IMG/VR virus record: IMGVR_UViG_3300047476_002078
Span: 1-64,000 of that record
Length of the DNA: 64,000 nucleotides
Direction: 5' to 3' (one strand)
Of the stretch, positions 4,428-63,821 are shown piece by piece; within the stretch, counting starts at the first letter, position 1, and each line of letters begins with the position of its first letter. Below the pieces are notes generated by a model. The model saw nothing but the letters and a program-made list of their open reading frames with translations. It did no database searches and was not told the origin of the DNA. Made by a program: the position numbers and the translations under genes.

Positions 4428-4585
4428 TTGTATGTCTTAATTGCGGAATAGAGTTATCAGAGGAAAAAGATATATATTTCTCTGAATATGAGATTTATGC
4501 TAAAGCCTACATTTGCGAATGTGGTGGAGAATTTATGACATCCGATCAATTGGATGACATGTTAAATAAGATTAAGAAAGAATAG
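4424..4585 (+). CDS. Small zinc-finger protein (YgiT-type-like), not in the track
   Basis: ATGA overlap with the previous stop; MIVCLNCGIE...AYICECGGEFMTSDQLDDML, 53 aa. Confidence 0.65.
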   Translation: MIVCLNCGIELSEEKDIYFSEYEIYAKAYICECGGEFMTSDQLDDMLNKIKKE

Positions 4586-7500: not shown

Positions 7501-8312
7501 ACTTCATTTGTTATTGTGCGAAGAAAATTGATGCGGTTATCTTGAAGTGATATTGTGTAACCTATATTTTCTTCTGAAATTTCTTCGTTTATGCTGATTT
7601 GTAGCGTTCCCGAAATTATCAATTTTAAAACAGGCATGTTTACAAACTGAATACCACTTGATGCGTTTTTAACCAAAATTTCATCAACAACAACTTTTAT
7701 TCGGGCTAGATCAAATTCTGGATTTGTTGTGTTATTAACAAAAATAATGTTCGCCCCGTTATCTATCGGAGTTATTCCTGACGAAGGAACTAAAACTCCA
7801 GTAGCATCATAATTCTGACTTTGGTTAATCCATTTAAAATCTATGGATGAAAAAACAAAATTATTTTTTACCCACTTAACTGAACTGCTTCCAAGTTTTG
7901 CGGTAGTCTCTGATTCAATTAAATATTCTGCGGTTTTTGCATAAAATACCTGAACAGTATTTTTAACATTCACTCCAATTTTTCCTTCGATTATTGCTCG
8001 ATCAGAAGGATTGCCTTGTAAAATCGCTTCATAATTAGAGTTTTGGTTTATAGCGTCAACTAAGTCTTGAAGTTGTTTTCCGACTAAAGGTATAACGAGA
8101 TTGTCTGAGTGTGTTAAGTCTTCGTTTACTAGAGTCACTAATTCTTTAGCGTTAAGAAAAAGAAAAGCTGTGTCACCAGAACCGTTGTATTTTACGGTAA
8201 AAGCGTTACTTAGCGTGTACGTTCCTGAAGTTGAAGGAGGCAATGTTTTTTTATGATTTACTGCCGAAACTCGTGGCTGTCTAATTATGAAACTTGTTAA
8301 ATTAATAGGCAT
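4572..8312 (-). CDS. Large virion structural protein (baseplate/tail-associated candidate)
   Basis: 1246 aa, Ser/Thr/Asn-rich beta modules, with two copies of an ITxGxNDx(I)II..G.AN..LG module. Confidence 0.6.
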   Translation of the reverse strand: MPINLTSFIIRQPRVSAVNHKKTLPPSTSGTYTLSNAFTVKYNGSGDTAFLFLNAKELVTLVNEDLTHSDNLVIPLVGKQLQDLVDAINQNSNYEAILQGNPSDRAIIEGKIGVNVKNTVQVFYAKTAEYLIESETTAKLGSSSVKWVKNNFVFSSIDFKWINQSQNYDATGVLVPSSGITPIDNGANIIFVNNTTNPEFDLARIKVVVDEILVKNASSGIQFVNMPVLKLIISGTLQISINEEISEENIGYTISLQDNRINFLRTITNEVYTFDSSTSQFDLNNTGVGGVIKDLISITLNGNLLTPNVDFIAQDTTEYQSRAMSSGRIYFTQSFTDDLIAEYVLSTEGALISNDLIIKKNGTIVDSSEYVIALEAGFLNLNTPLFPEDVLTASYRSADFGQINDEILAGTPATVTNTLPAPYTITAGENDNIIIQVESVIESITLPIGLNVSLDEIIEAYNSQASNSFATKNTAGNRFIISSRIAGSSSSIQILQANGNINLGLTTGLNSVGFGANGGEFAFDLVNAPIEINSFKVPQNGNTFYIREANVANNYLPDTLIQINNDFYLVESSSTSNKATLFSNPEPFRITSGINDKFIIEVDDVEKTIILTSGDRTAQDIAEDINLIVSIASSVTINNQTVVKLESQSSGIGSRLKIKEGTANLMLGFTNNQTDSGLTDTIITVQGLFYTAYENPILRTTKKPVTFITETNSPEKCVAGSSTIEFNGVDVTNNYKPNTVIKINNNLYSVLSSRFEDGKTIIQLLSRTVAPIYPIDVIQFTRRPVFLEGQTELSFLSTPIIDLPITVKDNNVILQEGIDYTINENGTITLSDLKKLNSSSSIQASYTIFSNIPENSTIVATYKFFSNLNEGSIVKASYEFISPDQFFYDVVYENDIAEKILDKIRSENDSLSNPSSSGYSATAGGEEANSDSGNETPKWVEYKARIEDGIAKKYFDFFNNRINAFTNERLKYNGWIVGANNGVVTESDIQNIVNSSSRLFPQGYSSSLPFRVPALDGINQNDNGTTTGGTTNNTIVTYVNNEKSNINSETSLLNVILSLPTFSFPLPGQEPETTRLTSEEYQDWLNLVQGEINNQNLYLVLLNQVNDFLSVIMEEFRPPYDISFNEAKEWRDKVNSFISDTNQSKSKNQIDLTMDINQNSNITNRRDVTNPSRLNEINTFLSNLNDRLSEISNTLTSTQENLFNKRYSWLTYRASRGTGTVSSIKRAVDSQNSSNEQIGINNTILS

Positions 8313-9185: not shown

Positions 9186-9773
9186 ATGAAGAACTTTTAT
9201 GAAATGCAAACAGTTAAATTCAAACTCAAGCCAATACAAAATTTTGAACCTGTTGGAAGTTGCGGGGTGTACGCTTTATCGTACATTACAGGATTAAAGT
9301 TATCTTACATTGATAAATTCACTCCTAAAAAAGGTTGGTGGTCGGATAAAGATATTTTGAAATTTTTAAAAAATTTGGGATATAAATATTTAAAAATATG
9401 TGATTCTACAATCCATCGTCAAAAACTTACTGGAAAGAACTACTATGAAAAAAATATTAACCATTTGAATGTAGTTTTAATATCCCAACATACTACCAAA
9501 GAAGAAGGAAGCTGGGCGGTAGTTTATGATAATAGATACTATCATGGAACAGAAGTTGAATTTTTCAGTGGGTATGAGCTATTAGTAAATCCGTTATGGA
9601 CAGGCTACGTTATTTTTCACCCTAAATGGAAAAGTTCAGCCAAACAAATAAGAGAAAAAATAGATCAAAATTTTTTAGCAATACATAAAATTTGCGGTAA
9701 AAAAAATATTAATGATTATTATCATCCCTCATTATCTATTTGGCATCACTCAGTTTCTAAAAAGTTTAAGTAA
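9186..9773 (+). CDS. Hypothetical protein, possible papain-like cysteine peptidase
   Basis: GSCGVYALS motif plus a later His and W-x-V-V-Y-D segment; weak. Confidence 0.35.
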   Translation: MKNFYEMQTVKFKLKPIQNFEPVGSCGVYALSYITGLKLSYIDKFTPKKGWWSDKDILKFLKNLGYKYLKICDSTIHRQKLTGKNYYEKNINHLNVVLISQHTTKEEGSWAVVYDNRYYHGTEVEFFSGYELLVNPLWTGYVIFHPKWKSSAKQIREKIDQNFLAIHKICGKKNINDYYHPSLSIWHHSVSKKFK

Positions 9774-10415
9774 TTTTTCCCAAGCGTTTGGCTTTAATTC
9801 TAGTTTCGGCTCTGGGATTATTTCAATTTCTAATTCCTTATCTTTTTTTGTAACTGCTTTTTGTTTAACAACTTCTTCATTTTCTTTCGGTTTTTCAGAT
9901 TCAACAACTACTAAAGGATTTTTCCACGGTTTAAGATAACCAAGAAGAACAAAAGAACCAGAATTTCCTATAAGTCTTTTTCTTCTATAAACTCCATCAC
10001 CTTCACGATTAATACCTATACCGTCGCTAGTATTTCCTTCTATCGTAATCATGGTCTTGTTATCTATGATTTTTTCAACGATGCCTGTGTGCCCTGAAGC
10101 TGTAGGTTTTCCGTTTTTGTAATAGTTCCAAATAACAATAGCTCCGACTTCTGGTTTACTTAGACGGGCTTCTTTTGGTGATTTATTCCAACATGTTAAT
10201 ACGTGCTCTGTTTTGAATATCCAAGAACTAATGCCTCCAAATTCATCTGTTTTTTTTATACAGTATTGGACAAAAGACATGCACCAAGGTTCCCCTTGAG
10301 CTTTCCCATCTACAGCTTTTTGAAATTCTTCAACCATTTTCCCCTTGTTTTTACCCGACTCTTTGACTCCAACAAGTTTAGAAGCTATTCCGCATAGTTT
10401 TTGAATCTTATTCAT
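9750..10415 (-). CDS. CHAP-domain peptidoglycan hydrolase (endolysin candidate)
   Basis: EPWCMSFVQ, GHTGIV and TIEGNT motifs. Confidence 0.85.
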   Translation of the reverse strand: MNKIQKLCGIASKLVGVKESGKNKGKMVEEFQKAVDGKAQGEPWCMSFVQYCIKKTDEFGGISSWIFKTEHVLTCWNKSPKEARLSKPEVGAIVIWNYYKNGKPTASGHTGIVEKIIDNKTMITIEGNTSDGIGINREGDGVYRRKRLIGNSGSFVLLGYLKPWKNPLVVVESEKPKENEEVVKQKAVTKKDKELEIEIIPEPKLELKPNAWEKLLKLFRN

Positions 10416-10819: not shown

Positions 10820-11746
10820 ATGAATTTAAGAAAAATAGCAGGAAGAGTAGCTTTAAAATATGCGGCATCTGGACCATCCTTTGATTACAAATTTAATGAA
10901 GAGGATTCAGAAAAATTAGTGAGAAATCCTAACCCTCACGGTGTTAAGAAAATGGTGACACAGGAATACGCTGATAGATTTTTGGGGAAACAGCCAAAAA
11001 AATCTCCTGTTGAAAATAAACCTGCTCCTTCAACAATTTCTAAAGCTAAAGAAAATAAGGAAAGAGTAGAAAATCAGAAAAAAACTAATCAAAAGCACTC
11101 GAATGGGATGAATAAACCTGAATACAATAAAAAGGGTGCTGAAGTAACAAAAGATGAATGTGTTTCTTTTATTAAAGAGTTTCACCCTGCTTTTGAAGAA
11201 GCCGCTTCATGGGGAGAAGGGTTTAAAAAATCAGGAGCGATGAGTTTTTCAGGAAGATTAAAAGACGAAAATTCTCTACATGATAAAATGAAAGGAAGAT
11301 TCAAAGAAAGAACTTTGAATTCGGCAGGGGATATTGTAGGAAGTAGAGCTATTTGCAAAAATATGAACGATGTTAAAAAAATCATTTCTCATGTTTATGA
11401 CACTTATGATGTTTTAGAACACGATGATAGTGTAGAAGAAAAAGTAAGACCTGAAGGGTACAGAGCACATCATTTTACAATCAAATCAAGTGATGGTAAA
11501 TTAATTGAACTTCAAGTTAAAACGCAAAATCAACAATTATGGTCAGGGTACACACATGACACAATTTATAAAGCTGAAGACCCTGAAATAATACAAGCCA
11601 AGCCAGATATAGATAAATATACTAAAGCAGTTAGTGACTATATTTATGCTGTGGATACTGGCAAAGACCCCGGTTCTTTTCCAGAAACTCCAGAAATATT
11701 AAAAAAGAAAAATTTAGCTTTCCCTGCTAATGACATAGTGAGATAA
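10820..11746 (+). CDS. Small alarmone synthetase (RelA/SpoT synthetase domain) with N-terminal extension
   Basis: GRLKDENSLHDK, DIVGSR, EHDD, GYRAHH and ELQVKT..QQLW..YTHDTIYK motifs; no hydrolase, TGS or ACT domain. Confidence 0.88.
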   Translation: MNLRKIAGRVALKYAASGPSFDYKFNEEDSEKLVRNPNPHGVKKMVTQEYADRFLGKQPKKSPVENKPAPSTISKAKENKERVENQKKTNQKHSNGMNKPEYNKKGAEVTKDECVSFIKEFHPAFEEAASWGEGFKKSGAMSFSGRLKDENSLHDKMKGRFKERTLNSAGDIVGSRAICKNMNDVKKIISHVYDTYDVLEHDDSVEEKVRPEGYRAHHFTIKSSDGKLIELQVKTQNQQLWSGYTHDTIYKAEDPEIIQAKPDIDKYTKAVSDYIYAVDTGKDPGSFPETPEILKKKNLAFPANDIVR

Positions 11747-11750
11747 GAAA

Positions 11751-11963
11751 ATGAAATACTATCTAGTTATAAGAGATAAAAAAAATAAAAACTTAGACGT
11801 AAAAGAATATCCTACCATGAAAAAAGCTTCCGCAGTAAAAGAAGCTATGCTTAAAAGCGGTCATGAAGGGCAATTAGTAATAGGTTACGGAAGCTCAATG
11901 AATGATTTTTTAACATCATTTACAGAGTATCGACCAAAAAATTGGAAAGATTTAATTAAGTAA
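11751..11963 (+). CDS. Hypothetical protein, 4 bp downstream of the synthetase
   Basis: 70-aa ORF, tight operon spacing. Confidence 0.6.
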   Translation: MKYYLVIRDKKNKNLDVKEYPTMKKASAVKEAMLKSGHEGQLVIGYGSSMNDFLTSFTEYRPKNWKDLIK

Positions 11964-12573
11964 TTTTTTTGGCAGGTATTCCAACATAAATACCACTTTC
12001 TGTTAAATTTTTGACAACTGCGGATTGAGCACCAGTAATTACATTTTCTGATATACAAATTTTTTCTCGAACCGCTGTTCCTGTTCCCAAAGAGGAATAT
12101 TTTCCGATAACTGTGTTACCTGAAATGTGACAGCCCGGATTTGCTGTTACATAATCATCAATTACTGCGTCGTGCCCAACAGTACAGTTAAGATTCAAAA
12201 CAACGTAATCCCCGATTTTAACATTAGTAGTGATTATACACCCTGCGGTTATAATCCCTCCTACACCTATATCAGCATCTTGAACTAAAGCTTTTGGGTG
12301 AACAAATGTTTTCATTGGCTTTAATCCGCTTTTCAATGCTTTTTCTACCATTATTTTTTTAACTTCGGGATTACCTACACCGATTATAAATTCAGCATTT
12401 TGAAATGAATCAAAGTTCCAATTTTTAACAACCTTGTAACTTTTATTTTTTATAATTATTTCTTCAATATTTGTGAAATCATCCACAAAAATAAAATCAG
12501 CATTAAAAGAATCTAAGTGAAAAAAGACTTCCCTTGCAAATCCCCCTGCTCCAAGAATAACTATGTTTTTCAT
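11956..12573 (-). CDS. NeuD/PglD-family sugar acetyltransferase
   Basis: ILGAGGFAREV N-terminus, hexapeptide repeats, VGHD, C-terminal GIPAK. Confidence 0.9.
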   Translation of the reverse strand: MKNIVILGAGGFAREVFFHLDSFNADFIFVDDFTNIEEIIIKNKSYKVVKNWNFDSFQNAEFIIGVGNPEVKKIMVEKALKSGLKPMKTFVHPKALVQDADIGVGGIITAGCIITTNVKIGDYVVLNLNCTVGHDAVIDDYVTANPGCHISGNTVIGKYSSLGTGTAVREKICISENVITGAQSAVVKNLTESGIYVGIPAKKIT

Positions 12574-14654
12574 GAAAGAGCCTCAATAATTCCATTGAAA
12601 ACTTCATCCATTTCTTCATTTGTAATAGTTTCGTAAAACGGTATGCACAATATTCTGTCTGACATGTTTTCAGTTTTTGACAAGTCGTTAAATGCCAAAT
12701 TATCTTTGAAAAAAGGCTGTGCGTGAATAGGTATGTAGTATATTCTGGTGTTAATACCTTTTTTGTTCAAAGATTCAATAACTAAATTTCTTTCTTCTTT
12801 ATTTGATAAAATAATAGGGTAAACCTGATAACCTGAATTAATATTTTTAATTGTTTTTATTGAACTTGTAGAAAATTTTTGTTGATAGTAATCGTGTTTT
12901 TGCTTTTTAATATTTATTTTATTTTCAATAGTATCCATAACAGATAGACCTATAGCAGCATGAAATTCAGAGCATTTTGCATTTGTACCCGATAAGGTTG
13001 AAACATTATTGGTAAAACCAAAATTTATAATTTTTCTGCATTTCTCAATAAAATTTGAATTTTTACTGGTCACTAAGCACCCTTCACCAATACCAAAAGT
13101 TTTGGTTATATGCAGACTGAAAATTTCGCAATCTCCTGCCGACCCTAATTTTGTTTCGTCACTGTACGATGCTCCAAGTGCAGCCGCCGAATCAAAAATT
13201 AAAATTAATCCATGTTTATTAGCAAAGTCTTCGTACTTTTTATAATCACATGTGTAGCCGAGAGCCTGAACGACAATCATGGCTTTTGTATTGGCAGTTA
13301 ATTTTTTTTCTGCGTTTTTAATACATAAATGAATACCTTCTTCTTCAATATCAACTAAGACAGGATTACATTCAGCGTTTAATACAGAATGTGCTGTAGC
13401 AGAAAACGTAAAAGATGGAATTAAAATATCACAGTTCTTTAAATCATGTGCTTTTATAGCAACAGTTAATCCTATTGTTGCGTTATTCATTAAAACTGGG
13501 ACATTATCAAGATTGAGATAGGACTTGAACCTTTCCTCTAACATTTTTACACAGGGTCCGTTGTTAGAGAATGTATTTGATTCATAGGAATCTACTAAAT
13601 ATTTAGCCCAATCTTTGATTTGTGGTGGGTTAGGTTTTAAAACAGGTATCTTTAAAAAAAGATCAGAGTCATCAAAAAATTTACTGGCGTAATTTGGCAA
13701 ATTTTTAATGTCGAATCTTTCGTATCTTTCAGAGATTTCTAAATTCACTTTAGAATTTATCTGAATTTCACTTAAAGCAGAGCTAGATATTATTGAATTT
13801 GGGACATTTACTGTAAAATGGTCTTGTTCTATTTTGTAAACATTCAAACTTAACCCATTAACTGAAATAGAATCTTCTATCTTTAAATCAGCTAGTATCT
13901 CTGGGCAAGAAATTATAAATTCTTTTGATTCCTCTAAGTTGTTAATTGAAGATACAGTCCCTATATTTTTGATTTGACCAGCAAACATATTTCCCTTCCT
14001 ATTTTGTATATCAACCCCAAATATAGGGTATTTATCTAAATCTTTGAAATGCCATCCGATTATTTCACCATTAGATAAAGAATTTGATCTTAAATTATCT
14101 ACGTTATTGACCGTAAAATGAAAAAGAGGGTCAAAATTCTTTTTTAGACACATTAAATTTTTACTATCTTGAATATTATTTTGAATTTTCAAATTTAAAA
14201 AATATCTAAAATTTTGGAGCTTGAAAACAATAGGCTCCTGATTATCTGTAAATAAAGCATGAGCTTCTCTTGTCCAACTCATTAATGTTTGATTATTAAA
14301 AACGATATTATCTTCGGAGAGTATGACAATATCTTCCGGTTGTGCAGAAGATAGAGCTTCTGACAGTTTTGAATAGTGGTGCGTTAAATTTTCAACAAGT
14401 GAATTTTCTGAAGGTAAGTCTATGACGCTGTACAAAATTTTATCTTTATACTTATCAAAAATGTCTTTATTTTCTTCAAACAGTAGAGCTTTCGGCTTTC
14501 CGTTATAATCTTGGTTACATTCTACGAAAACAAAATAATCAACGATGGAAAGTTCATAAACTAATGTTTCTAAAACTGTTAGGGTATGTTTACCGTAATT
14601 TACAATAGGTACACATAAAAAAACTTTTTTTCCAAATTTATTGCTTAATTCCAT
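12570..14654 (-). CDS. Fusion: GT17-like domain + riboflavin-synthase-alpha-like barrel + DegT/DnrJ sugar aminotransferase
   Basis: N: DYFVFVECN..NGKPK, GWHF; aa 223-306: MFAGQIKNIGTV..DSISVNG..VNLE; C: PSFTFSATA, FDSAAALG, SLHITKTFGIGEGC. Confidence 0.85.
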   Translation of the reverse strand: MELSNKFGKKVFLCVPIVNYGKHTLTVLETLVYELSIVDYFVFVECNQDYNGKPKALLFEENKDIFDKYKDKILYSVIDLPSENSLVENLTHHYSKLSEALSSAQPEDIVILSEDNIVFNNQTLMSWTREAHALFTDNQEPIVFKLQNFRYFLNLKIQNNIQDSKNLMCLKKNFDPLFHFTVNNVDNLRSNSLSNGEIIGWHFKDLDKYPIFGVDIQNRKGNMFAGQIKNIGTVSSINNLEESKEFIISCPEILADLKIEDSISVNGLSLNVYKIEQDHFTVNVPNSIISSSALSEIQINSKVNLEISERYERFDIKNLPNYASKFFDDSDLFLKIPVLKPNPPQIKDWAKYLVDSYESNTFSNNGPCVKMLEERFKSYLNLDNVPVLMNNATIGLTVAIKAHDLKNCDILIPSFTFSATAHSVLNAECNPVLVDIEEEGIHLCIKNAEKKLTANTKAMIVVQALGYTCDYKKYEDFANKHGLILIFDSAAALGASYSDETKLGSAGDCEIFSLHITKTFGIGEGCLVTSKNSNFIEKCRKIINFGFTNNVSTLSGTNAKCSEFHAAIGLSVMDTIENKINIKKQKHDYYQQKFSTSSIKTIKNINSGYQVYPIILSNKEERNLVIESLNKKGINTRIYYIPIHAQPFFKDNLAFNDLSKTENMSDRILCIPFYETITNEEMDEVFNGIIEALS

Positions 14655-14742: not shown

Positions 14743-15084
14743 GTGTCTATGAGTTTTATGAACAGGATACGTAAAGAGGCTCTTAGTGATGAGGAGCTTA
14801 TCAAAATTCGAGAAAGCGAGCTTCTTTTTAACGAAAATCGTTACGGTAATAACGTACCAAAAGAAGAAATAGAAGAAGATAATAGATGCCGTGAGGTTCT
14901 ATCTGGTATTAAAGCACAAGCTGAATCTTTGTTGAGTGATACAGATACTTTAGAAATAAACATTAAAAAAATAGAAGATAATCTACAAAATGTTACGGTT
15001 TCAGGAACTTCTAATCAAGATTATGACGAAATTATTCTTTCAGTCGATGAAGGTAAAGTTATTTTTAAAATAACACCAAATTAA
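14743..15084 (+). CDS. Hypothetical acidic protein with RIRKEA leader
   Basis: RBS GGAGGT; start is probably the ATG at 14749. Confidence 0.6.
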   Translation: MSMSFMNRIRKEALSDEELIKIRESELLFNENRYGNNVPKEEIEEDNRCREVLSGIKAQAESLLSDTDTLEINIKKIEDNLQNVTVSGTSNQDYDEIILSVDEGKVIFKITPN

Positions 15085-15413
15085 ATTGAAAAAGATTCAC
15101 CGCAACCACAGGTATTTTTGGCATTATGGTTTTCAAATACAAAACCTTTTCCATTAAGACCGTCTTTAAAGTCAAGTGTGACTCCTTTCAGATAGATAGC
15201 GGATTTAGGGTCTATTAAGATGGAGATGTTATCCAAACTTAATATGTTGTCTTTTTCTTTAAACTGAGAAAATTCTATTTTATAAGATAACCCAGAACAT
15301 CCTCCTCCTGTTACAGAGATGCGTAAACCCTTTTCGTTGTTCGCATTTTCGGTACTCCAGATGTCTTTTATTTGTTGGATTGCCTTTTCGGTTACTTCAA
15401 TTATGTTGTTCAT
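15081..15413 (-). CDS. iscA: A-type Fe-S carrier protein (IscA/HesB)
   Basis: GGGCSGLSY and TCGCGESF motifs. Confidence 0.93.
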   Translation of the reverse strand: MNNIIEVTEKAIQQIKDIWSTENANNEKGLRISVTGGGCSGLSYKIEFSQFKEKDNILSLDNISILIDPKSAIYLKGVTLDFKDGLNGKGFVFENHNAKNTCGCGESFSI

Positions 15414-16096
15414 AAAACCTCTTTATCAATTATCGCCGTAATTTGCTCTTTTGATAGAGTTCCATCTATTTCAAAAACTTTAGGAAAATTTGTAGATAAT
15501 TCAATTTCTCCTAAAAAGGGACAGTTTAATTTATTTATAGCAAATTTTTGTCCGTTTATGCTATTCAAAGAGTTTAAATCCTTAGAAATTCTTAAAAAAT
15601 TTTCTCTTACTTTTTCCGTAAAACTGTCACCTTTAGATTCTTCTCTCGTGGAAGAAGTATCACCTCTTTCAAACCTTCGTTTTGTAGCTTCTTCGATAGG
15701 TATATCTAAGAAAAAAATATGAGAGGGGAAAACCTGAATAGCAAATTTTAACAGGTTCCAAATGTCTTGAACTTTGTTTCCACAAGCTACACCATAAGCT
15801 AAACCGCTCATAAATGATCTGTCTGAAACAACAAAATAACCGTCTTCTAAAAGCTGTTTTACCTTGGCGGTATGTTCGGCTCGATCAGCTTGCATTAGCA
15901 GTTCCAATGATGCTGGAGATATTTTTTCATGGCTTAAAACAAAATCTCGAACTTTTAAATTTATCAAAGGGCTTCCGGGTTCTCTAGTCCAAATTGCTTT
16001 GTGCCCTGAATTGATTAATCTTTTTACTAAATTTTCACTGTGACTTGATTTACCACACCCGTCGATTCCTTCAAACACGATATATTTGTTTTCCAT
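15410..16096 (-). CDS. tmk: Thymidylate kinase
   Basis: FEGIDGCGKS, TREPG, QADRAEH and SDRSFMS..AY motifs. Confidence 0.93.
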   Translation of the reverse strand: MENKYIVFEGIDGCGKSSHSENLVKRLINSGHKAIWTREPGSPLINLKVRDFVLSHEKISPASLELLMQADRAEHTAKVKQLLEDGYFVVSDRSFMSGLAYGVACGNKVQDIWNLLKFAIQVFPSHIFFLDIPIEEATKRRFERGDTSSTREESKGDSFTEKVRENFLRISKDLNSLNSINGQKFAINKLNCPFLGEIELSTNFPKVFEIDGTLSKEQITAIIDKEVL

Positions 16097-16167: not shown

Positions 16168-16809
16168 ATGATTAGTATTATTACAAGCGTAAATGACCAA
16201 GAGCAATATGAACAATTTATGATGCCTAGTATGAACAGGCTTCAGAAATTTCTTATGGATTCTAATCTTCCTACTCTGGATATAGTAAAAGTTTCTGGTT
16301 CAGAGTCTATCGGCAAGAATTACAATGAAGGCATAAGAAAAGCCATCTACAAGGTAAAAGTTTTTATTCACCAAGATGTAGATATGCTAGAAATAGATTG
16401 GGCTTTTAAACTTCTAAAAATTTTTGCTGATTACCCAGATGTGGGATTAGTAGGATTGGTAGGAACCGTAAATTTTCCGAATAGAGGGTTTTGGTGGACT
16501 TCTGGAAGAGAATTTATTCGTGGAGAGCTTTGGTCAGGAAAAGAAAAAGCTGATTGGACTTTTTTGCCTGTGATTGCCCCGACAACAGTAGAATGTATTG
16601 ATGGCTTTTTCATGGCAACAAATAGAGACATTCTATGGGATGAGGACATTAAAGGTTTTCATTGTTATGATATGGACTACTCTCGTACAATTACTAAAAA
16701 CGGTTTAAAAATAATGGTCATGCCTCATAAATCTTGGCATATTGGAGAAATTCGAGAGGCAAAACACGAGCATTTATTTGAAACTTACTATAAAAAATGG
16801 AATTTATGA
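16168..16809 (+). CDS. GT-A glycosyltransferase-like protein
   Basis: YNEGI..A, FIHQD, IDGFFMA and FHCYDMD motifs. Confidence 0.8.
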   Translation: MISIITSVNDQEQYEQFMMPSMNRLQKFLMDSNLPTLDIVKVSGSESIGKNYNEGIRKAIYKVKVFIHQDVDMLEIDWAFKLLKIFADYPDVGLVGLVGTVNFPNRGFWWTSGREFIRGELWSGKEKADWTFLPVIAPTTVECIDGFFMATNRDILWDEDIKGFHCYDMDYSRTITKNGLKIMVMPHKSWHIGEIREAKHEHLFETYYKKWNL

Positions 16810-17717
16810 AAATAGCAGTTTTTTGGGGTGGAAGACATACTTTGCCCGGTGCTTGCGATGAAAATACTTGGTACAGTTTTTACAATTCTGGTTGGAAGTA
16901 CGGATTTGAAAGTTTAGGGCACTCTGTACATTATTTTTCATGGGATGACCATGAAGATAGATCAGGATATGATCTTTACATTTACGCTCCGGGGTTTTTA
17001 ACAAATTTAACTTATCATCCAAAAATTTATCATCCGAACGTATTTTTTACTGAAGAGGCTAGTTGTGCAGTTTCTTGGGCGGCTTCTCACAGTTACTACT
17101 ACGATGCGGTCACATTTCTTGATTACATAAATTGGAAAGCTGTAAAACATATAGGCGTTAATAACGCATATTGGGTGCCCGGTGCAGTTGACCCGACAGT
17201 GTTTAAAAATTTGAATCAGGAAAGAATATATAATACAGCGTTTTTAGGTTCTTATGATGATAATGTTAAAATCATTAATGGTAAGACACGATTAGATTTT
17301 ATACGAGCTATTGACGCTCATAATAAACCTTCAATGGTAGCCAGAGGTTATTACGCATTTGAAGCTAATAAGATTTGGAATGTTACTAAAATAGGTGTCG
17401 ATGTACCGATAGTTGAGTTCTGTTCTTTTAGACTTTTTCAAATAATTGCGTCAGGGGCTTTCTGTATTACTCGAAAAACTAGATTGGATAGTGGAATATC
17501 ACAACTTCTTGAACCTGATATGTATGACACTTATAACGACATAGATGATCTTGTTTTTAATGTAGCTCCGTATTGGATAGTTAAAGACCAAAAACGGGAG
17601 AAACTATGTAAGACTGCTCAAGAGTTTGTTCTCCAAAATCATACTTTTAAAAATCGTGCAGAGCAAATATTAAAAATAGCTGGTCTTATGGAAGGAAAAA
17701 TTCCGTATCAAGGATAA
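16806..17717 (+). CDS. GT-B glycosyltransferase (CgeB-like C-terminal domain)
   Basis: AVDPTVF, AFLGS, RLFQIIASGAF and HTFKNRAEQIL motifs; ATGA overlap gives a start at 16806. Confidence 0.78.
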   Translation: MKIAVFWGGRHTLPGACDENTWYSFYNSGWKYGFESLGHSVHYFSWDDHEDRSGYDLYIYAPGFLTNLTYHPKIYHPNVFFTEEASCAVSWAASHSYYYDAVTFLDYINWKAVKHIGVNNAYWVPGAVDPTVFKNLNQERIYNTAFLGSYDDNVKIINGKTRLDFIRAIDAHNKPSMVARGYYAFEANKIWNVTKIGVDVPIVEFCSFRLFQIIASGAFCITRKTRLDSGISQLLEPDMYDTYNDIDDLVFNVAPYWIVKDQKREKLCKTAQEFVLQNHTFKNRAEQILKIAGLMEGKIPYQG

Positions 17718-17722
17718 CTATA

Positions 17723-17953
17723 ATGGCATCTCCTTATGAAAAAGAGGTAATTGATATTCTTTTAAAAACAAAAGGAAAAGCTGTGTGCTTTTTGGTTTTG
17801 GATGGCTCAAAAGGAACTAGCTTTGAAGTAAGGTCTGTTGATGAAAAATACATGCGGAGTCTGCCAAAAATTTTAATAGAAATAGCCAGTAAAATTGAAG
17901 GCGAATTGAACGAAAAAGATTTAAAGAAGAAAATGGAAAATTTAGATGTTTGA
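17723..17953 (+). CDS. Hypothetical protein
   Basis: 76-aa ORF inside the operon. Confidence 0.6.
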   Translation: MASPYEKEVIDILLKTKGKAVCFLVLDGSKGTSFEVRSVDEKYMRSLPKILIEIASKIEGELNEKDLKKKMENLDV

Positions 17954-18575
17954 TCTTAATTATCAAAACCCTTATAATCCTTACGTAACTAAGACTCAAG
18001 AATTTGGAAATTTTAAATTTGAGAGTTTATCCATAGAAGGTTTAGTTATTATTACTCCTAAAATCTATGGAGACAGTAGAGGCTACTTCCTTGAAACTTA
18101 TAATGAATACGCATTTTTAAACGCTGGGATACCTACACAGTTTAAACAAGATAATCAAAGTTATTCAAGTAAAGGTGTACTTAGAGGGATGCACATACAA
18201 AACCCTACCTTTCAAGGAAAGCTTGTAAGATGTAATAGCGGATTAGTTTATGATGTTGCAATTGATTTAAGAAAAGGTAGTAAAACTTTTGGTCATTTTG
18301 CTGGAATTTTATTAGACCCGAAAATTAAAAATATGTTCTATGTTCCTGAAGGATTTGCACACGGGTTTTTAGCTTTAGAAGATTCTGAGTTTGTTTATAA
18401 ATGCTCTGAAACTTGGAAACCTAACGAAGACCTCACGGTTTCTTATGATTGTTTTGGTGCTCCTTGGTTAGATATTGCGAATAAATACGATATTTCAGAA
18501 TTTTTAACTTCTGTTAAAGACCGCCAAAATGCTATTAGTGTTGAACAATATCGAGTAATGTACTGCTTGGAGTAA
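17946..18575 (+). CDS. rfbC: dTDP-4-dehydrorhamnose 3,5-epimerase
   Basis: DSRGYFLETY, QDNQSYS..GVLRGMH, DVAIDLR and YVPEGFAHGF motifs. Confidence 0.92.
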   Translation: MFDLNYQNPYNPYVTKTQEFGNFKFESLSIEGLVIITPKIYGDSRGYFLETYNEYAFLNAGIPTQFKQDNQSYSSKGVLRGMHIQNPTFQGKLVRCNSGLVYDVAIDLRKGSKTFGHFAGILLDPKIKNMFYVPEGFAHGFLALEDSEFVYKCSETWKPNEDLTVSYDCFGAPWLDIANKYDISEFLTSVKDRQNAISVEQYRVMYCLE

Positions 18576-19035: not shown

Positions 19036-21279
19036 ATGAAATCCAACAAAATTGAAAATAAAATTATTGAGACAACTGCTTGGTACGCCAAAACTTTTAA
19101 AGAAAGTCACGGCACTTCCTACGCTTTTAGAAATTTTAAAGTTCTAAAATTTTTAGGGGAAACCTCAAAAGCTTATCATGTTGATGTAGAGTTTTTTTCA
19201 GGTATCTCTTGCACTTGCGGAGTCTGCGGAAGGATTCTATCGAACGCAGTTTCTAAAGCGACTGGAATTGGTCCCGTTTGTGCTGAAAAAATAGGTCTTC
19301 CAAGACCAACACTAGAGTCGGCAAAAGAAACCGTTAAATTAATGGAATCTTTATCACAACAACAAGGTCAATTTACAAGTATTTGGATTCCAAAATCACA
19401 AATTAAAAGAATCGTAGGTGAAGACGGACAAATAATCGAAGGAGACTCTCCTGAATCTGAAAATGATTCAGAAAAAGTAGAAGTTAAATTAGAACATGAG
19501 ATAAAAGTTTCAGGTCAAGAAGTTACTTTCAAATTTAAAGGCGGAGATTTCCAAAATATTTTGAATAAGATGCGTTCAATGAACGGTAAGTGGGATGCTT
19601 CTTCTAAGTCATGGGTAGTATCTCTACAAAATGTAAAAAAAGAATCAAACTCCCTTAAACTTTTAGGATTTAATTTTGATTTAAGCGTGGAAGATGCAGA
19701 AGTCGAAAAGCCTTTGATGCAAATATCCATTGAAGATGATACTGCAATTATCAATTCACCTTATAACTCTCAATTGGTTAATTTTTTCAGAAATAACTCA
19801 GGGTTTATTTATAACGCTTCAAATCACTCAAGAAAGATTAACATTATTTCAGGAGCAGAGACTCTAAAAAAACTTATAGAATTTGCAAAGAATATAGGAT
19901 TTGAAGTTGATGAATCTATAAGCTCTCACCTTGAGGATTTAAAACAAAAGAAAATCGAACTTGAAGCAACAAAAAAAGATTTCACGATTGATCTAAATCT
20001 TGGAATGAAGGTTAAACCATACCCATATCAAATGGCAGGAATTAAGTTCATTGATCTTGCTAACGGCAGAGCAATTGTTGGAGATGAGATGGGTCTTGGA
20101 AAAACTATGCAGGCTTTAGGATGGGTAGCTTGGAGAAAAAAGAAAGCTCTTGTTATTTGTCCTAATTCTTATAAACTCGGTTGGGCTAGAGAGATAACTA
20201 AGTTCACAAATTGCACTAGCCAAGTTTTAGGAAGTAAAAATGTTGAATTTGAGCAATCTGATTTTACGATTATCAACTATGAAAATATTAAAAAACATGA
20301 TTTTTCAAAATTAAATTACGATACAGTTATTATTGATGAATCTCATAAAATTAAAAATTCTAAAACACAAAGATTCGAGTCTTGTGATAAAATTGTATCC
20401 AAATCAAAACATGTAATTTTGCTGACAGGTACAGCGATTGTTAATAGACCTGTTGAATTTTACACACAGCTTAAAATGGTTTCACCTTCATTAGTCGGTT
20501 CTTATGGTTCTTATACTGCTAAATTTTGTGGAGGTCACAATAACGGTTACGGTTGGGATACTAATGGGGCTACGAACTTGGATGAGTTAAGCAAACTTAT
20601 TTCTCCTATCTACCTTCGCAGGATTAAATCAGAAGTTCTTACTGAGTTACCTTCAAAAATTCATCAAGATATAATGATTGAAGGGGTTAAAGTAAAATTA
20701 AATAGACATTCAAAAAACGCTCTTGATGAAATTAATAATCTGAAAATTGAGTTAGCTAAGGAAAAAGTTAGTCATACAATCGAGTTCGTCGAAAACATGG
20801 TTGAGAATGGGGACAAGGTAATTGTTTTCAGTGACTATATTGAGACTGCTAAAAGTATAGCAGATGCTCTTGGAGAAAAAGCTGTATGCTATTTAAGTGA
20901 ACTTTCAACAGAAGAAAGATTCGAGATTGAAAAGAAATTTCAAGAAGATGAAAATGTAAGAGTTTTTGTCGCCACTATGAAAGTCGCAGGGGTAGCACTT
21001 ACTTTAACGGCAGCTAACAAAGTATGTTTTAATGATCTTCCGTGGACTCCGGGCGATTTAAGACAGTGTGAAGATAGAGCACATAGAATCGGTCAAAAAA
21101 ATTCAGTAAATGTTTACAAGATGGTAGCTGAAGGAACGCTGGACGAGTACATTAATGATCTTCTAAACGACAAAATACGTATTCTTGATGCGGTACTTGA
21201 TGGAAAAGAAATTTCGTCTTCTGATAGAGCTATCTTAGATTTATCAATAGAATCAAAGCTTTGTAATATGGTGCGTTAA
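19036..21279 (+). CDS. SNF2-family helicase with N-terminal zinc finger and HARP-like region
   Basis: CGVCGRIL..S.ATGIGPVC; GDEMGLGKT, IIDESH, LLTGT and QCEDRAHRIGQ motifs. Confidence 0.9.
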   Translation: MKSNKIENKIIETTAWYAKTFKESHGTSYAFRNFKVLKFLGETSKAYHVDVEFFSGISCTCGVCGRILSNAVSKATGIGPVCAEKIGLPRPTLESAKETVKLMESLSQQQGQFTSIWIPKSQIKRIVGEDGQIIEGDSPESENDSEKVEVKLEHEIKVSGQEVTFKFKGGDFQNILNKMRSMNGKWDASSKSWVVSLQNVKKESNSLKLLGFNFDLSVEDAEVEKPLMQISIEDDTAIINSPYNSQLVNFFRNNSGFIYNASNHSRKINIISGAETLKKLIEFAKNIGFEVDESISSHLEDLKQKKIELEATKKDFTIDLNLGMKVKPYPYQMAGIKFIDLANGRAIVGDEMGLGKTMQALGWVAWRKKKALVICPNSYKLGWAREITKFTNCTSQVLGSKNVEFEQSDFTIINYENIKKHDFSKLNYDTVIIDESHKIKNSKTQRFESCDKIVSKSKHVILLTGTAIVNRPVEFYTQLKMVSPSLVGSYGSYTAKFCGGHNNGYGWDTNGATNLDELSKLISPIYLRRIKSEVLTELPSKIHQDIMIEGVKVKLNRHSKNALDEINNLKIELAKEKVSHTIEFVENMVENGDKVIVFSDYIETAKSIADALGEKAVCYLSELSTEERFEIEKKFQEDENVRVFVATMKVAGVALTLTAANKVCFNDLPWTPGDLRQCEDRAHRIGQKNSVNVYKMVAEGTLDEYINDLLNDKIRILDAVLDGKEISSSDRAILDLSIESKLCNMVR

Positions 21280-56521: not shown

Positions 56522-56597
56522 TGGAGCGGGCGAAGGGGTTTGAACCCTCGACATCCAGATTGGAAATCTGGCACTCTACCAACTGAGCTACGCCCGC
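56522..56597 (-). tRNA. trnG: tRNA-Gly(TCC)
   Basis: 76-nt cloverleaf GCGGGCG..., anticodon arm CCAGA-TTTCCAA-TCTGG, T-loop TTCAAAC, encoded CCA. Confidence 0.96.
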
Positions 56598-62701: not shown

Positions 62702-62913
62702 AAACAAAATTAATCTTAGCCTTTCTGTTATTTTTTAGTAGTTGCGGAAAACCGATAGTTGATAAATCCGATGAAGTTCAAAGAGAAGTTTATTCTTCAG
62801 AGTATGATTTAAAAAGAGAGGTTCTCAATTACAATTTTACAAGGTATTCTAACAAAGAAATAACATGCTATACCTTCAATGGTTTTGATTTGGATTGTAA
62901 ATGGAAGTTTTAG
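62698..62913 (+). CDS. Small lipoprotein
   Basis: MKTKLILAFLLFFSS-C lipobox-like. Confidence 0.65.
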   Translation: MKTKLILAFLLFFSSCGKPIVDKSDEVQREVYSSEYDLKREVLNYNFTRYSNKEITCYTFNGFDLDCKWKF

Positions 62914-63821
62914 TTACAGGCGGAGCAGGATTTATCGGAAGTCATTTATGTGACCATTTAATCAGTAAAGGTTGCAATGTTACGGTAATTGATGACTTAT
63001 CAACAGGCAGAAATAAAAATTTATCCAAAAAAGTCGATTTTATTCAAGCAGATATTTCAAAGCAAGAGACGTGGAATAGTTTAAACAAAAATTTTAATGC
63101 TTTGTTTCATTTAGCCGCAAAAACTTCGGTAACAGAATCGGTAAAAATACCGTCATTCTATTTTCAGCAAAATGTTATTACGTCACAATACATTTATGAA
63201 TGGAGCATAAAAAACAACGTAAAGAATGTAATTTATGCAAATACCGCTGGAGCCTTGTACGGTGACGCTTTTGATAAAGGTCATAATGAAAGCTCCTTAC
63301 CTAAGCCTAAGTCTCCTTATGGTGCGACTAAATACGCCTGCGAGCTTTTTTTAATGTCTCTCCCAATAAATTTTACTTCCATAAGATTAGCCAACGTATA
63401 TGGGGAGAGACAAATAACCAAAGGTGAAGCAGGAGTAATCCCTATTTTTACGGAAAATATTCACGCTGGTAAAGATTGCATTATTTTCGGTAAAAATAAA
63501 ATGCGTGACTACATTCATGTAACAGATGTTTGTGAATATTTTGTTAGAGCCTTTGAAAAAATGCTCCCATCACAGGGATGGAAAGAGATTTTTAATGTAG
63601 GGACAGGCGTAAAAACTGAAGATGAGAAAGTTTTTAATACTATTTCTAGTGTAATTAAAAAGCCTGCTCAAATGTTATATGCTGATAAGAGAGATGGGGA
63701 AATAGATGTAACTTATTTAGACATCTCTAAAGCAAAAGAGATTTTAGAATATGAACCAAAAATAGAATTTGTTCAAGGTTGCTCGAATACTGTCAGATAT
63801 TATTTAGAAAATGAGTTTTGA
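62901..63821 (+). CDS. NAD-dependent nucleotide-sugar epimerase/dehydratase (GalE/WcaG-like SDR)
   Basis: VTGGAGFIGSH, YGATK, NVYGERQ and RDYIHV.D motifs. Confidence 0.93.
   Translation: MEVLVTGGAGFIGSHLCDHLISKGCNVTVIDDLSTGRNKNLSKKVDFIQADISKQETWNSLNKNFNALFHLAAKTSVTESVKIPSFYFQQNVITSQYIYEWSIKNNVKNVIYANTAGALYGDAFDKGHNESSLPKPKSPYGATKYACELFLMSLPINFTSIRLANVYGERQITKGEAGVIPIFTENIHAGKDCIIFGKNKMRDYIHVTDVCEYFVRAFEKMLPSQGWKEIFNVGTGVKTEDEKVFNTISSVIKKPAQMLYADKRDGEIDVTYLDISKAKEILEYEPKIEFVQGCSNTVRYYLENEF

What the first reader, a model, noticed from the sequence alone, without database searches (positions are those of the whole stretch)
12570..14654. GT17-like / riboflavin-synthase barrel / DegT triple fusion
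Seen: aa 223-306 (13988..13737) read MFAGQIKNIGTVSSI..DSISVNGLSLNV..KVNLE, a recognisable N-terminal half of riboflavin synthase alpha. It has the MFTG-like start but lacks the Cys of the usual NGxCLT. It sits between the GT17-like GWHF motif and the aminotransferase, and is preceded by an SD-like AGGAAGGG. Inference: a captured flavin/lumazine-binding module acting as a trimerisation or cofactor domain, possibly with an internal start giving a RibE-DegT isoform. I do not recognise this architecture.
Basis: partly seen in the sequence, partly recalled or inferred. Interest (0 to 1): 0.7.

Follow-up and report, generated by a model that had tools for sequence, protein, structure and literature searches.

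The report
Phage sugar enzyme with riboflavin-synthase connector
A giant freshwater phage carries a real three-part gene that joins a glycosyltransferase-like domain, half of a riboflavin synthase and a sugar aminotransferase, and the borrowed half most likely serves as a pairing connector rather than making or binding vitamin B2.

Summary
ORF 12570..14654 (-) encodes 694 aa, and three Pfam families score above their curated cut-offs: Glyco_transf_17, one Lum_binding barrel, and DegT_DnrJ_EryC1 with its PLP lysine. It is not an assembly chimera. The same architecture occurs at 86-89% and 69-70% identity in five other assemblies, with all domains under purifying selection. An exhaustive search of 1.84 billion representatives found no other protein with this N-terminal combination. 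Related phages carry the aminotransferase unfused. The genome is a 356-kb freshwater jumbo phage that also encodes RmlA-D, a VioB/PglD-like acetyltransferase overlapping the fusion's stop, and two further glycosyltransferases. The barrel derives from the N-terminal half of ribE, and its Met223 aligns with RibE Met1. It lacks the second barrel, the trimerisation helix and the conserved Cys/Thr ligand residues. It is predicted to homodimerise (score 0.70, best control 0.01). The trimerisation idea is therefore unlikely, and flavin binding is unproven. The internal-start idea gains support. AGGAAGGG before Met223 is kept in all orthologs through rare codons, uniquely among the gene's conserved Lys and Arg positions. 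This is a new architecture built from known parts.

The parts
12570..14654 (-). Whole fused gene, 694 aa plus stop (P0001)
   Evidence: Orthologs P0002 (691 aa) and P0003 (694 aa) align end to end, with gaps only within the GT17-like domain (aa 3 and 192-193 of P0001 are absent from P0002) and none at either domain junction.
14034..14627 (-). Short phage-type GT17-like GT-A domain, aa 10-207
   Evidence: Pfam PF04724 scores 31.2 bits against a cut-off of 26. The standalone homolog P0004 (243 aa, 43% identity) aligns to aa 10-206. The AF2 model has pLDDT 80.9 and pTM 0.82. Its best fold matches are MGAT3 of human, rat and mouse, TM 0.58-0.63. PDB matches show a generic GT-A fold.
14307..14315 (-). 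E114-D115-N116, at the position of the family's DxD(E) motif (SEDNIVF against consensus SDxDEIP)
   Evidence: Alignment A4. The stretch D108-Q122 is invariant in the three orthologs.
14046..14057 (-). GWHF motif, aa 200-203. G200 and W201 are invariant across 29 family members.
13993..14000 (-). SD-like AGGAAGGG, 4 nt upstream of ATG Met223. Candidate internal ribosome-binding site and probable relic of the ancestral ribE RBS.
   Evidence: It is conserved in all three orthologs through rare codons.
13731..13988 (-). Single riboflavin-synthase-type (Lum_binding) beta-barrel, aa 223-308, derived from a RibE N-barrel
   Evidence: It is closer to N-barrels than to C-barrels in 84 of 103 RibE proteins. 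A homodimer is predicted.
13650..13730 (-). Linker, aa 309-335, between the barrel and the aminotransferase. It ends where unfused homologs have their start Met (L334-K335 here, with no start codon).
   Evidence: pLDDT is low. dN/dS is 0.09.
12573..13649 (-). DegT/DnrJ/EryC1 PLP-dependent nucleotide-sugar aminotransferase domain, aa 336-694
   Evidence: PF01041 scores 250 bits and covers 7-358 of 360 profile positions. Best PDB matches are 3ju7, DesI 2po3 and perosamine synthase 3bn1. Unfused homologs are 45-62% identical.
13101..13103 (-). K518, the Schiff-base lysine in SLHITK
   Evidence: It aligns to SFHATK of 3ju7. It is invariant in the orthologs.
11956..12573 (-). Downstream NeuD/PglB/VioB-family N-acetyltransferase, 205 aa. 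Its ATG overlaps the fusion's TGA (ATGA at 12570-12573).
   Evidence: TIGR03570 scores 152.9 bits against a cut-off of 160.8.
16168..17717 (+). Two further glycosyltransferase genes of the cluster: Glyco_tranf_2_5 (16168-16809) and Glyco_trans_1_2 (16797-17717)
   Evidence: They are syntenic in the ortholog contigs and in related phages.
17946..18575 (+). RmlC, dTDP-4-dehydrorhamnose 3,5-epimerase
   Evidence: TIGR01221 scores 183.2 bits against a cut-off of 155.75. PF00908 scores 184.5 bits.
15410..16096 (-). Thymidylate kinase, a conserved neighbour of the sugar cluster
   Evidence: Synteny is shown.

Best explanation
This is a genuine three-domain protein specific to one lineage of freshwater jumbo phage, and it sits in the phage's own dTDP-sugar glycosylation pathway. 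Shown: the C-terminal domain is an intact PLP-dependent nucleotide-sugar aminotransferase. The middle domain is one beta-barrel taken from the N-terminal half of a riboflavin synthase gene, start codon included. The N-terminal domain is a short phage-type GT17-like GT-A domain. Inferred pathway: phage RmlA and RmlB make dTDP-4-keto-6-deoxyglucose. RmlC and RmlD turn part of it into dTDP-L-rhamnose. The DegT domain aminates C4 of the rest. The translationally coupled VioB/PglD-like enzyme N-acetylates the product. The GT17-like domain and the two neighbouring glycosyltransferases then transfer these sugars to an acceptor, most plausibly virion proteins. Inferred role of the barrel: it no longer acts in flavin chemistry. 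It pairs with the barrel of a second chain, as the isolated RibE N-domain does. This adds a second dimer contact next to the obligate aminotransferase dimer and holds two GT domains on one particle. Inferred isoform: the conserved SD-like element and ATG at the barrel's ancestral start probably also yield a 472-aa barrel-aminotransferase product.
For: Domain identities. Reality of the fusion: the same architecture occurs intact in JGI, Logan and ENA assemblies from five other samples, at 86-89% and 69-70% identity, with the same neighbours. Logan contigs from other lake samples are letter-identical over the barrel and linker. dN/dS is 0.06-0.24 in every domain and linker. Derived state: more than 30 unfused DegT homologs at 45-62% identity lie on 60-180 kb contigs with the same Tmk/GT2_5/GT1_2/RmlC cluster. 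They begin M(K)IPVLKPNPP exactly where the fusion reads LK-IPVLKPNPP. Pathway: RmlA, RmlB and RmlD lie at 229.4-232.0 kb of the genome and RmlC lies in the window. The acetyltransferase start overlaps the fusion's stop as ATGA. Barrel origin: Met223 aligns to RibE Met1, and N-barrel scores exceed C-barrel scores in 84 of 103 proteins. Dimer: ipSAE 0.70 against a best control of 0.01. That mark was reached by 20 of 30 solved homodimers and 1 of 23 single chains. The runs agree in at least 72% of contacts and pLDDT is at least 75. Predicted interface residues are invariant at 21 of 25 positions against 26 of 62 elsewhere in the barrel, p = 3.6e-4. The isolated E. coli N-domain is a homodimer, and trimerisation needs the C-terminal helix (PMC10366380). 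Internal start. Analogous virus and bacterial Rha plus viosamine glycosylation systems: PMC4691112 and PMC3927599.
Against: No experiment exists for any activity. The dimer prediction may be recalled from the solved RibE N-domain dimers. The predicted interface coincides with motifs conserved across the whole family (MFxG, NG, VNLE), and those motifs also line the ligand site, so their conservation does not separate pairing from ligand binding. The GT17-like domain deviates from its family in four ways: DxDE is changed to EDN, the W.RE..QR motif is lost, the NE motif is altered, and there is no segment after GWHF. Its catalytic competence is therefore uncertain. The aminotransferase scores below every NCBIfam equivalog cut-off, so the sugar, the nucleotide and the C4 stereochemistry are not fixed. 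I could not model whether a barrel dimer and a DegT dimer fit in one particle. The codon argument for the internal start is post hoc and rests on three sequences. The acceptor of glycosylation is unknown.
Confidence: 0.55

Rival explanations
1. The barrel still binds riboflavin, 6,7-dimethyl-8-ribityllumazine or a related heterocycle. It would then act as a cofactor, sensor or chromophore domain that links the sugar pathway to flavin status.
For: The domain scores well above the Lum_binding cut-off. Its fold is almost identical to the riboflavin-bound N-domain 1pkv. Isolated N-barrels of RibE and of lumazine protein do bind ligand (PMC10366380; PMC8272222). S269 matches the ligand residue Ser48 of lumazine protein. 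Ortholog P0003 has Ser at both Thr positions, which is a conservative change.
Against: The Thr of CLT (29 of 30 RibE barrels) is N/N/S in the three orthologs. The Thr of ETL (27 of 30) is I/L/S. The Cys is S/S/N and G300 is N. These positions are not even conserved among the three orthologs, while the pairing motifs are. No other riboflavin-pathway gene was seen: there is only one PF00677 match in the 356-kb genome. A transamination or a glycosyl transfer has no evident need for a flavin.
Confidence: 0.2
2. The barrel is a passive spacer left by the fusion event. It is kept only because it folds and holds the two enzymes apart, with no pairing or ligand function. The SD-like sequence is an unselected relic.
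For: The barrel is the fastest-evolving domain: 60% identity against 71-72% for the other two in the most distant pair. The flanking linkers have low pLDDT.
Against: dN/dS is 0.17-0.24, not neutral. Conservation is non-random, concentrated on the predicted interface. Rare AGG and AAG codons are retained in all orthologs even though synonymous sites are near saturation.
Confidence: 0.15
3. The barrel trimerises the protein, as in riboflavin synthase.
For: Bacterial riboflavin synthases are homotrimers (PMC10366380).
Against: Trimer contacts come from the C-terminal helix after the second barrel, and both are absent here. The isolated N-barrel is a dimer. DegT-family enzymes are dimers, which follows from established knowledge of fold-type I aminotransferases. 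A symmetric dimer is predicted.
Confidence: 0.03
4. The long ORF is an artefact: a chimeric assembly, or a sequencing frameshift that merged three genes.
For: The record is a metagenome assembly. My read-level check was limited to Logan contigs, and only one contig spans both junctions. That contig comes from a run that may be the source sample.
Against: Three diverged versions of the same fused frame exist in five other assemblies, with no stop and no indel at either junction. Both linkers are under purifying selection. Pieces from two 2018 lake samples are identical over the barrel, the linker and the DegT start.
Confidence: 0.01

Closest known systems
Riboflavin synthase N-terminal domain (E. 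coli RibC/RibE residues 1-97; PDB 1PKV, 1HZE) and lumazine protein LumP
   Same: Same beta-barrel fold (TM 0.92, rmsd 1.5 A). It starts at the equivalent of Met1 with MFxG and keeps the NG and VNLE motifs. A single barrel is expected to form a two-fold homodimer that mimics one RibE subunit.
   Different: There is only one barrel, no C-terminal trimerisation helix and no partner barrel elsewhere in the genome. The ligand and catalytic residues Cys and two Thr are replaced. The barrel is embedded between two sugar-metabolism domains, and the genome shows no other riboflavin-pathway gene.
VioA / DesI / PseC / WecE-type nucleotide-sugar 4-aminotransferases (DegT/DnrJ/EryC1 family)
   Same: Full-length PLP fold-type I domain with the SxHxxK lysine. 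It is followed by a VioB/PglD-family N-acetyltransferase and accompanied by RmlA and RmlB, as in viosamine or Fuc4NAc pathways.
   Different: It carries a 335-aa N-terminal extension. Its closest relatives at 45-62% identity are all unfused 352-368 aa proteins. It scores below every equivalog cut-off, so the exact product is unknown.
GT17 (MGAT3/GnT-III) and the short GT17-domain proteins of tailed phages
   Same: Pfam GT17 is above its cut-off. The best fold matches are MGAT3 residues 206-423. It shares the family-invariant D39, E45, K55, D108 and GW(H). Standalone phage proteins of 213-261 aa with this domain are common in the ESM Atlas, and P0004 is 43% identical.
   Different: DxDE is replaced by E-D-N. 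The W.RE..QR motif and the segment after GWHF are absent. The domain is fused to other domains. No phage or bacterial GT17-like protein is, to my knowledge, biochemically characterised.
Other fused sugar-nucleotide enzymes: PglD-type acetyltransferase-DegT fusions, and phage GT17-methyltransferase fusions
   Same: Consecutive or related steps of a sugar pathway are joined in one polypeptide. Examples are P0218 and P0235, with PglD_N + Hexapep + DegT, and GT17 + Methyltransf_24 in 445-aa phage proteins.
   Different: None of them uses a riboflavin-synthase barrel as the connecting module.
Virus- and bacterium-encoded rhamnose plus viosamine protein glycosylation (Mimivirus R141/L780/L136/L142; Pseudomonas syringae flagellin vioA/vioB/fgt)
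   Same: A 4,6-dehydratase product branches to rhamnose and to a 4-amino-4,6-dideoxyhexose that is N-acetylated, and dedicated glycosyltransferases then act (PMC4691112; PMC3927599).
   Different: The pathway here is dTDP-based and encoded by a bacteriophage. The acceptor is unknown. The aminotransferase is fused.

Membership tests
Riboflavin synthase (RibE/RibC, homotrimeric type) | Lum_binding (PF00677) profile match above the curated cut-off | tested here: met
   45.3 and 49.7 bits against a cut-off of 27.
Riboflavin synthase (RibE/RibC, homotrimeric type) | Two tandem homologous barrels in one chain | tested here: not met
   One matched stretch only, aa 226-307. There is a single PF00677 match in the whole 356-kb genome.
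Riboflavin synthase (RibE/RibC, homotrimeric type) | C-terminal helix that forms the trimer | tested here: not met
   The barrel is followed by a 27-aa linker and the DegT domain. The role of the helix is described in PMC10366380.
Riboflavin synthase (RibE/RibC, homotrimeric type) | Conserved ligand and catalytic residues (Cys and Thr of NGxCLT, Thr of ETL) | tested here: not met
   The orthologs read NGLSLN or NGFNSS. The ETL Thr is I/L/S. The comparison set is 30 RibE barrels.
Riboflavin synthase (RibE/RibC, homotrimeric type) | Binds lumazine or riboflavin | not testable with these tools
   This needs spectroscopy or ITC.
DegT/DnrJ/EryC1/StrS nucleotide-sugar aminotransferases | Full-length profile match | tested here: met
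   250.1 bits, profile positions 7-358 of 360.
DegT/DnrJ/EryC1/StrS nucleotide-sugar aminotransferases | Schiff-base lysine in SxHxxK. Dehydratase members lack it. | tested here: met
   K518 in SLHITK aligns to SFHATK of 3ju7 and is invariant in the orthologs.
DegT/DnrJ/EryC1/StrS nucleotide-sugar aminotransferases | Assignable substrate and product (equivalog level) | tested here: inconclusive
   PseC 185 bits (cut-off 423.5), DesI 174 (650), WecE-type 147 (375). All are below their cut-offs. The context of RmlA/RmlB and a VioB-like acetyltransferase suggests a dTDP-4-amino-4,6-dideoxyhexose.
Glycosyltransferase family 17 | PF04724 match above the curated cut-off | tested here: met
   31.2 bits against 26, but only profile positions 88-190 of 348 are matched.
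Glycosyltransferase family 17 | GT-A fold closest to the founding member MGAT3 | tested here: met
   The top three AFDB Swiss-Prot hits are MGAT3, TM 0.58-0.63. PDB hits show a generic GT-A fold.
Glycosyltransferase family 17 | Family DxD(E) motif after the beta-4 strand (SDxDEIP in 25 bacterial, viral and eukaryote-like homologs) | tested here: not met
   The phage reads SEDNIVF and the closest standalone homolog P0004 reads SEDSEIL. An acidic E-D pair remains, so metal binding is not excluded.
Glycosyltransferase family 17 | Complete catalytic domain, including the conserved segment after GWHF (LGG...K..SFSHxE) | tested here: not met
   The domain ends about 20 aa after GWHF. It covers MGAT3 206-423 of 533. 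The standalone P0004 is similarly short.
Glycosyltransferase family 17 | Glycosyl transfer activity | not testable with these tools
   This needs an enzyme assay.

The most novel reading that the evidence does not exclude
Half of a riboflavin synthase has been re-used outside flavin metabolism as a self-pairing, and possibly still ligand-sensing, connector in a phage glycosylation enzyme. Its retained ancestral ribosome-binding site and start codon would let one gene produce two isoforms, GT-barrel-aminotransferase and barrel-aminotransferase. These could co-assemble through the barrel and the DegT dimer, setting the ratio of glycosyltransferase to aminotransferase activity in one particle.
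Probability: 0.2. Interest if true: 0.65.

Novelty: new variant of a known kind. Interest (0 to 1): 0.45.

Why it matters
All three domains belong to well-known families, but this combination was found in only one small phage clade among about 15 billion predicted proteins. Outside riboflavin synthase itself, the Lum_binding barrel is known to me only in the lumazine and fluorescent antenna proteins. Its recruitment as a structural module in a sugar-nucleotide enzyme would be a clean natural case of domain exaptation, and it suggests a compact self-dimerising tag. The gene also carries a legible record of how it formed: an upstream stop was lost, the ancestral RBS and ATG were kept, and the DegT start codon was erased. 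It is therefore a testable case of internal initiation in a phage gene. More broadly, it belongs to a complete phage-encoded RmlABCD plus 4-acetamido-sugar plus three-glycosyltransferase system. That points to autonomous glycosylation by a freshwater jumbo phage, comparable to what giant viruses do.

Tried and rejected
- **Composite alignment for a full-length fold:** alignment A2 (110 rows) was rejected. MAFFT placed the GT17 and RibE fragments onto the DegT region, so the full-length protein was never modelled.
- **First AF2 model, aa 1-345:** it left aa 115-223 at pLDDT about 30. A second model of aa 1-222 with a cleaner alignment fixed this.
- **Searches for further relatives:** The search for related loci in viral and metagenome contigs, with the protein and with alignment A6, returned nothing. 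GenBank phages matched only the DegT part or ordinary ribE. PHROGs has no family for the first two domains.
- **Read mapping:** The second call gave only Logan contigs, with no raw reads and no RNA, so no transcript or start-site evidence was obtained.
- **Single-barrel proteins P0116 and P0117:** I considered them as possible donors. They sit on short contigs, one directly after ribD, and look like broken ribE genes.
- **Promoter and terminator scan:** nothing above chance inside the gene.
- **Terminase search:** Terminase_6C is not found in the genome, and the large window ORFs have almost no PHROG matches, so the phage lineage was not placed.
- **Literature:** no paper describes a Lum_binding fusion of this kind.
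Full report
**1. Observation**

The window holds one uninterrupted ORF at 12570..14654 on the minus strand, 694 aa. Pfam finds three families, each above its curated cut-off.

| Pfam family | Residues | Bits | Cut-off |
|---|---|---|---|
| Glyco_transf_17 | aa 28-124 | 31.2 | 26 |
| Lum_binding (single copy) | aa 226-307 | 45.3 | 27 |
| DegT_DnrJ_EryC1 | aa 349-688 | 250.1 | 19.8 |

- Met223 is at 13986-13988.
- GWHF is aa 200-203.
- The motif reads NGLSLN where RibE has NGxCLT.
- AGGAAGGG lies at 13993-14000, 4 nt before the ATG.

The middle segment matches lumazine protein and riboflavin synthases in the PDB by sequence, with E down to 2e-11. Its AF2 model (pLDDT 94-98) superposes on the riboflavin-bound N-domain of E. 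coli riboflavin synthase (1pkv_A) at TM 0.92 and rmsd 1.5 A.

**2. Not an artefact**

The window is the first 64 kb of a 355,874-bp IMG/VR virus record with direct terminal repeats, estimated 100% complete. That makes it a jumbo phage. Runs that hold the sequence are freshwater and lake metagenomes.

The same three-domain protein is found intact elsewhere:
- P0002 (691 aa) is 86-89% identical. It lies on a 39.6-kb JGI contig and on a Logan contig.
- P0003 (694 aa) is 69-70% identical. It lies on one JGI and two ENA assemblies.
- Both have the same neighbouring genes as the window.

The three proteins align end to end. The only gaps lie inside the GT17-like domain, and there is none at either junction. 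Nei-Gojobori dN/dS is 0.06-0.24 for every domain and both linkers. Logan contigs from two 2018 lake samples are letter-identical over the barrel, the linker and the DegT start. A 6.1-kb contig spans both junctions, although that run may be the source sample.

**3. How rare it is and how it arose**

I ran an exhaustive phmmer of aa 1-345 against 1.84 billion cluster representatives. Only one cluster, the orthologs, matches both N-terminal domains. All other hits fall into three groups:
- standalone GT17-like proteins of about 240-300 aa;
- GT17-like domains inside giant proteins;
- ordinary two-barrel riboflavin synthases at about 30-35% identity.

No GenBank phage has the architecture. Further locus searches found nothing.

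The DegT domain has more than 30 unfused relatives at 45-62% identity. They are 352-368 aa long and many lie on 60-180 kb contigs. Where I could inspect the context, these contigs carry the same Tmk / GT2_5 / GT1_2 / RmlC-like cluster. The unfused proteins begin M(K)IPVLKPNPP. The fusion reads ...FLK-IPVLKPNPP, with TTA or TAT where the start codon was.

The barrel begins at a Met that aligns with Met1 of RibE. It scores higher against N-barrels than against C-barrels in 84 of 103 riboflavin synthases.

The simplest history has three steps. A short phage GT17-like gene, the 5' half of a ribE gene with its RBS and ATG, and the resident aminotransferase gene were joined in frame. This happened once, in this clade.

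**4. Context and pathway**

The gene downstream of the fusion overlaps its stop as ATGA. It encodes a NeuD/PglB/VioB-family N-acetyltransferase with a PglD_N domain. Nearby lie thymidylate kinase, two more glycosyltransferases and RmlC, which scores above its equivalog cut-off. At 229.4-232.0 kb the genome encodes an RmlA-like protein, an RmlB-like protein and RmlD, which is above its cut-off.

By inference from these families, the phage makes dTDP-4-keto-6-deoxyglucose and splits it two ways. One branch gives dTDP-L-rhamnose. The other gives a dTDP-4-acetamido-4,6-dideoxyhexose.

The DegT domain keeps its Schiff-base lysine, K518 in SLHITK. Its nearest solved relatives are 4-aminotransferases: DesI and perosamine synthase. 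NCBIfam scores are below every equivalog cut-off, so the exact sugar is open.

The same branching logic, followed by protein glycosylation, is documented in two systems:
- Mimivirus, with R141, L780, L136 and L142 (PMC4691112);
- Pseudomonas syringae flagellin, with vioA, vioB and the fgt genes (PMC3927599).

The acceptor in this phage is unknown. Virion proteins are my guess.

**5. The N-terminal domain**

A model built on 29 homologs (pLDDT 80.9, pTM 0.82) has a GT-A fold. Its three best Swiss-Prot matches are MGAT3, the founding GT17 enzyme, at TM 0.58-0.63 over MGAT3 residues 206-423.

The residues invariant across the whole family are present: D39, E45, K55, D108, G200 and W201. The domain nevertheless departs from the family consensus in four ways:
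- SDxDEIP reads SEDNIVF.
- The W.RE..QR motif is lost.
- The early NE motif is altered, with a 4-aa insertion.
- The chain leaves the domain about 20 aa after GWHF, without the SFSHxE segment.

The closest standalone homolog, P0004 (243 aa, 43% identity), shares these departures. Short GT17-domain proteins are common in tailed phages in the ESM Atlas, some of them fused to a methyltransferase (a lead only). The domain therefore looks like a complete unit of a short phage subtype rather than a truncated remnant. Whether it catalyses transfer or only binds a nucleotide sugar cannot be decided here. The stretch D108-Q122 is invariant in the orthologs, so the site is under selection.

**6. What the barrel does**

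It is not a riboflavin synthase, for three reasons:
- It has one barrel only, and no second Lum_binding match exists in the genome.
- It has no C-terminal helix, which is what makes the RibE trimer (PMC10366380).
- Its most conserved ligand residues are replaced, as the table shows.

| RibE consensus residue | Conservation in RibE barrels | P0001 / P0002 / P0003 |
|---|---|---|
| Cys of NGxCLT | 24 of 30 (N-barrels; C-barrels have Ser) | S / S / N |
| Thr of CLT | 29 of 30 | N / N / S |
| Thr of ETL | 27 of 30 | I / L / S |

The isolated E. coli N-domain is a homodimer that mimics one full subunit (PMC10366380). A two-copy prediction of aa 218-335 passed the tool's mark:
- The score was 0.70 against a best control of 0.01.
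- That mark was reached by 20 of 30 solved homodimers and by 1 of 23 single chains.
- The runs agree in at least 72% of contacts, and pLDDT is at least 75.
- The tool warns that the result may be recalled from the solved dimers.

The predicted symmetric interface is aa 222-228, 231-232, 264, 266-269, 291-296, 301-304 and 306. It is invariant at 21 of 25 positions among the orthologs, against 26 of 62 elsewhere in the barrel (p = 3.6e-4).

DegT enzymes are themselves dimers, which is established family knowledge. A dimerising connector is therefore the most economical reading. Residual ligand binding remains possible: S269 equals Ser48 of lumazine protein (PMC8272222), and P0003 has Ser at both Thr sites.

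**7. Internal start**

AGG AAG GG(A/T) AAT ATG is identical in all three orthologs, even though synonymous sites between the most distant pair are near saturation (pS about 0.7). The supporting numbers are:
- In this genome AGG is 9% of Arg codons and AAG is 17.6% of Lys codons.
- SD-like motifs precede 5.8% of internal ATGs but 40% of first-ATG starts.
- Within the gene, K220 is the only one of 39 invariant Lys that is AAG in all three orthologs.
- R219 is the only one of 8 invariant Arg that is AGG in all three.
- Met223 is the only internal Met with an SD-like motif upstream.

This is post hoc and rests on three sequences. It does suggest selection at the nucleotide level. A 472-aa barrel-aminotransferase isoform is plausible but unproven. 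No start codon survives at the old DegT start, so the aminotransferase is always made with the barrel attached.

**8. Verdict**

- Right: the barrel is captured, the architecture is unrecognised, and an internal start is plausible.
- Unlikely: trimerisation.
- Untested and mildly disfavoured: cofactor binding.

This is a new domain architecture built from known families. It is restricted to one freshwater jumbo-phage clade. I rate it of moderate interest.

Noticed in passing
window 10820-11746 (+): A 308-aa protein with a RelA_SpoT nucleotidyltransferase domain (57.5 bits), which suggests a phage-encoded alarmone-synthetase-like enzyme. It is conserved next to the sugar genes in the ortholog contigs L002 and L003.
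   Followed up: no
window 15081-15413 (-): A HesB/IscA-type Fe-S cluster biosynthesis protein (64 bits) lies between the fusion gene and thymidylate kinase. It is conserved in all ortholog contigs.
   Followed up: no
G000:C1:229385-232044 (L008) and window 17946-18575: The phage encodes a full RmlA/RmlB/RmlD set about 215 kb from RmlC and the aminotransferase cluster, so the dTDP-sugar pathway is split between two genome regions.
   Followed up: partly
window 62901-63821 (+): A second SDR-type sugar epimerase/dehydratase. The best NCBIfam match is GalE at 162.6 bits, below its cut-off. It may feed another nucleotide sugar into the same glycan.
   Followed up: no
window 19036-21279 (+): A 747-aa SNF2-family helicase with an N-terminal DUF6011 domain. 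It is syntenic in L002.
   Followed up: no
window 4572-8312 (-): A 1246-aa ORF with no Pfam or PHROG match. It is conserved in L002. Several other large ORFs in the window also lack any PHROG family, so this is a poorly charted phage lineage.
   Followed up: no
window 9750-10415 (-): A CHAP-domain protein (46 bits), a probable peptidoglycan hydrolase.
   Followed up: no
window 56522-56597 (-): tRNA-Gly (TCC), the only tRNA found in the window.
   Followed up: no
proteins P0218 (614 aa) and P0235 (598 aa): Metagenomic proteins that fuse a PglD_N/hexapeptide acetyltransferase to a DegT aminotransferase. In the phage, the same two activities are separate but translationally coupled.
   Followed up: no
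ESM Atlas clusters: Tailed-phage proteins of about 445 aa that fuse a GT17 domain to Methyltransf_24 (285 members). There are also many standalone phage GT17-domain proteins of 213-261 aa. This appears to be an uncharacterised phage glycosyltransferase class.
   Followed up: no
L006 6826-7923 (related 121-kb phage contig): In a relative with an unfused aminotransferase, the position upstream of DegT holds an IMPDH/GMP-reductase-like gene on the opposite strand. This flank is therefore variable between relatives.
   Followed up: no
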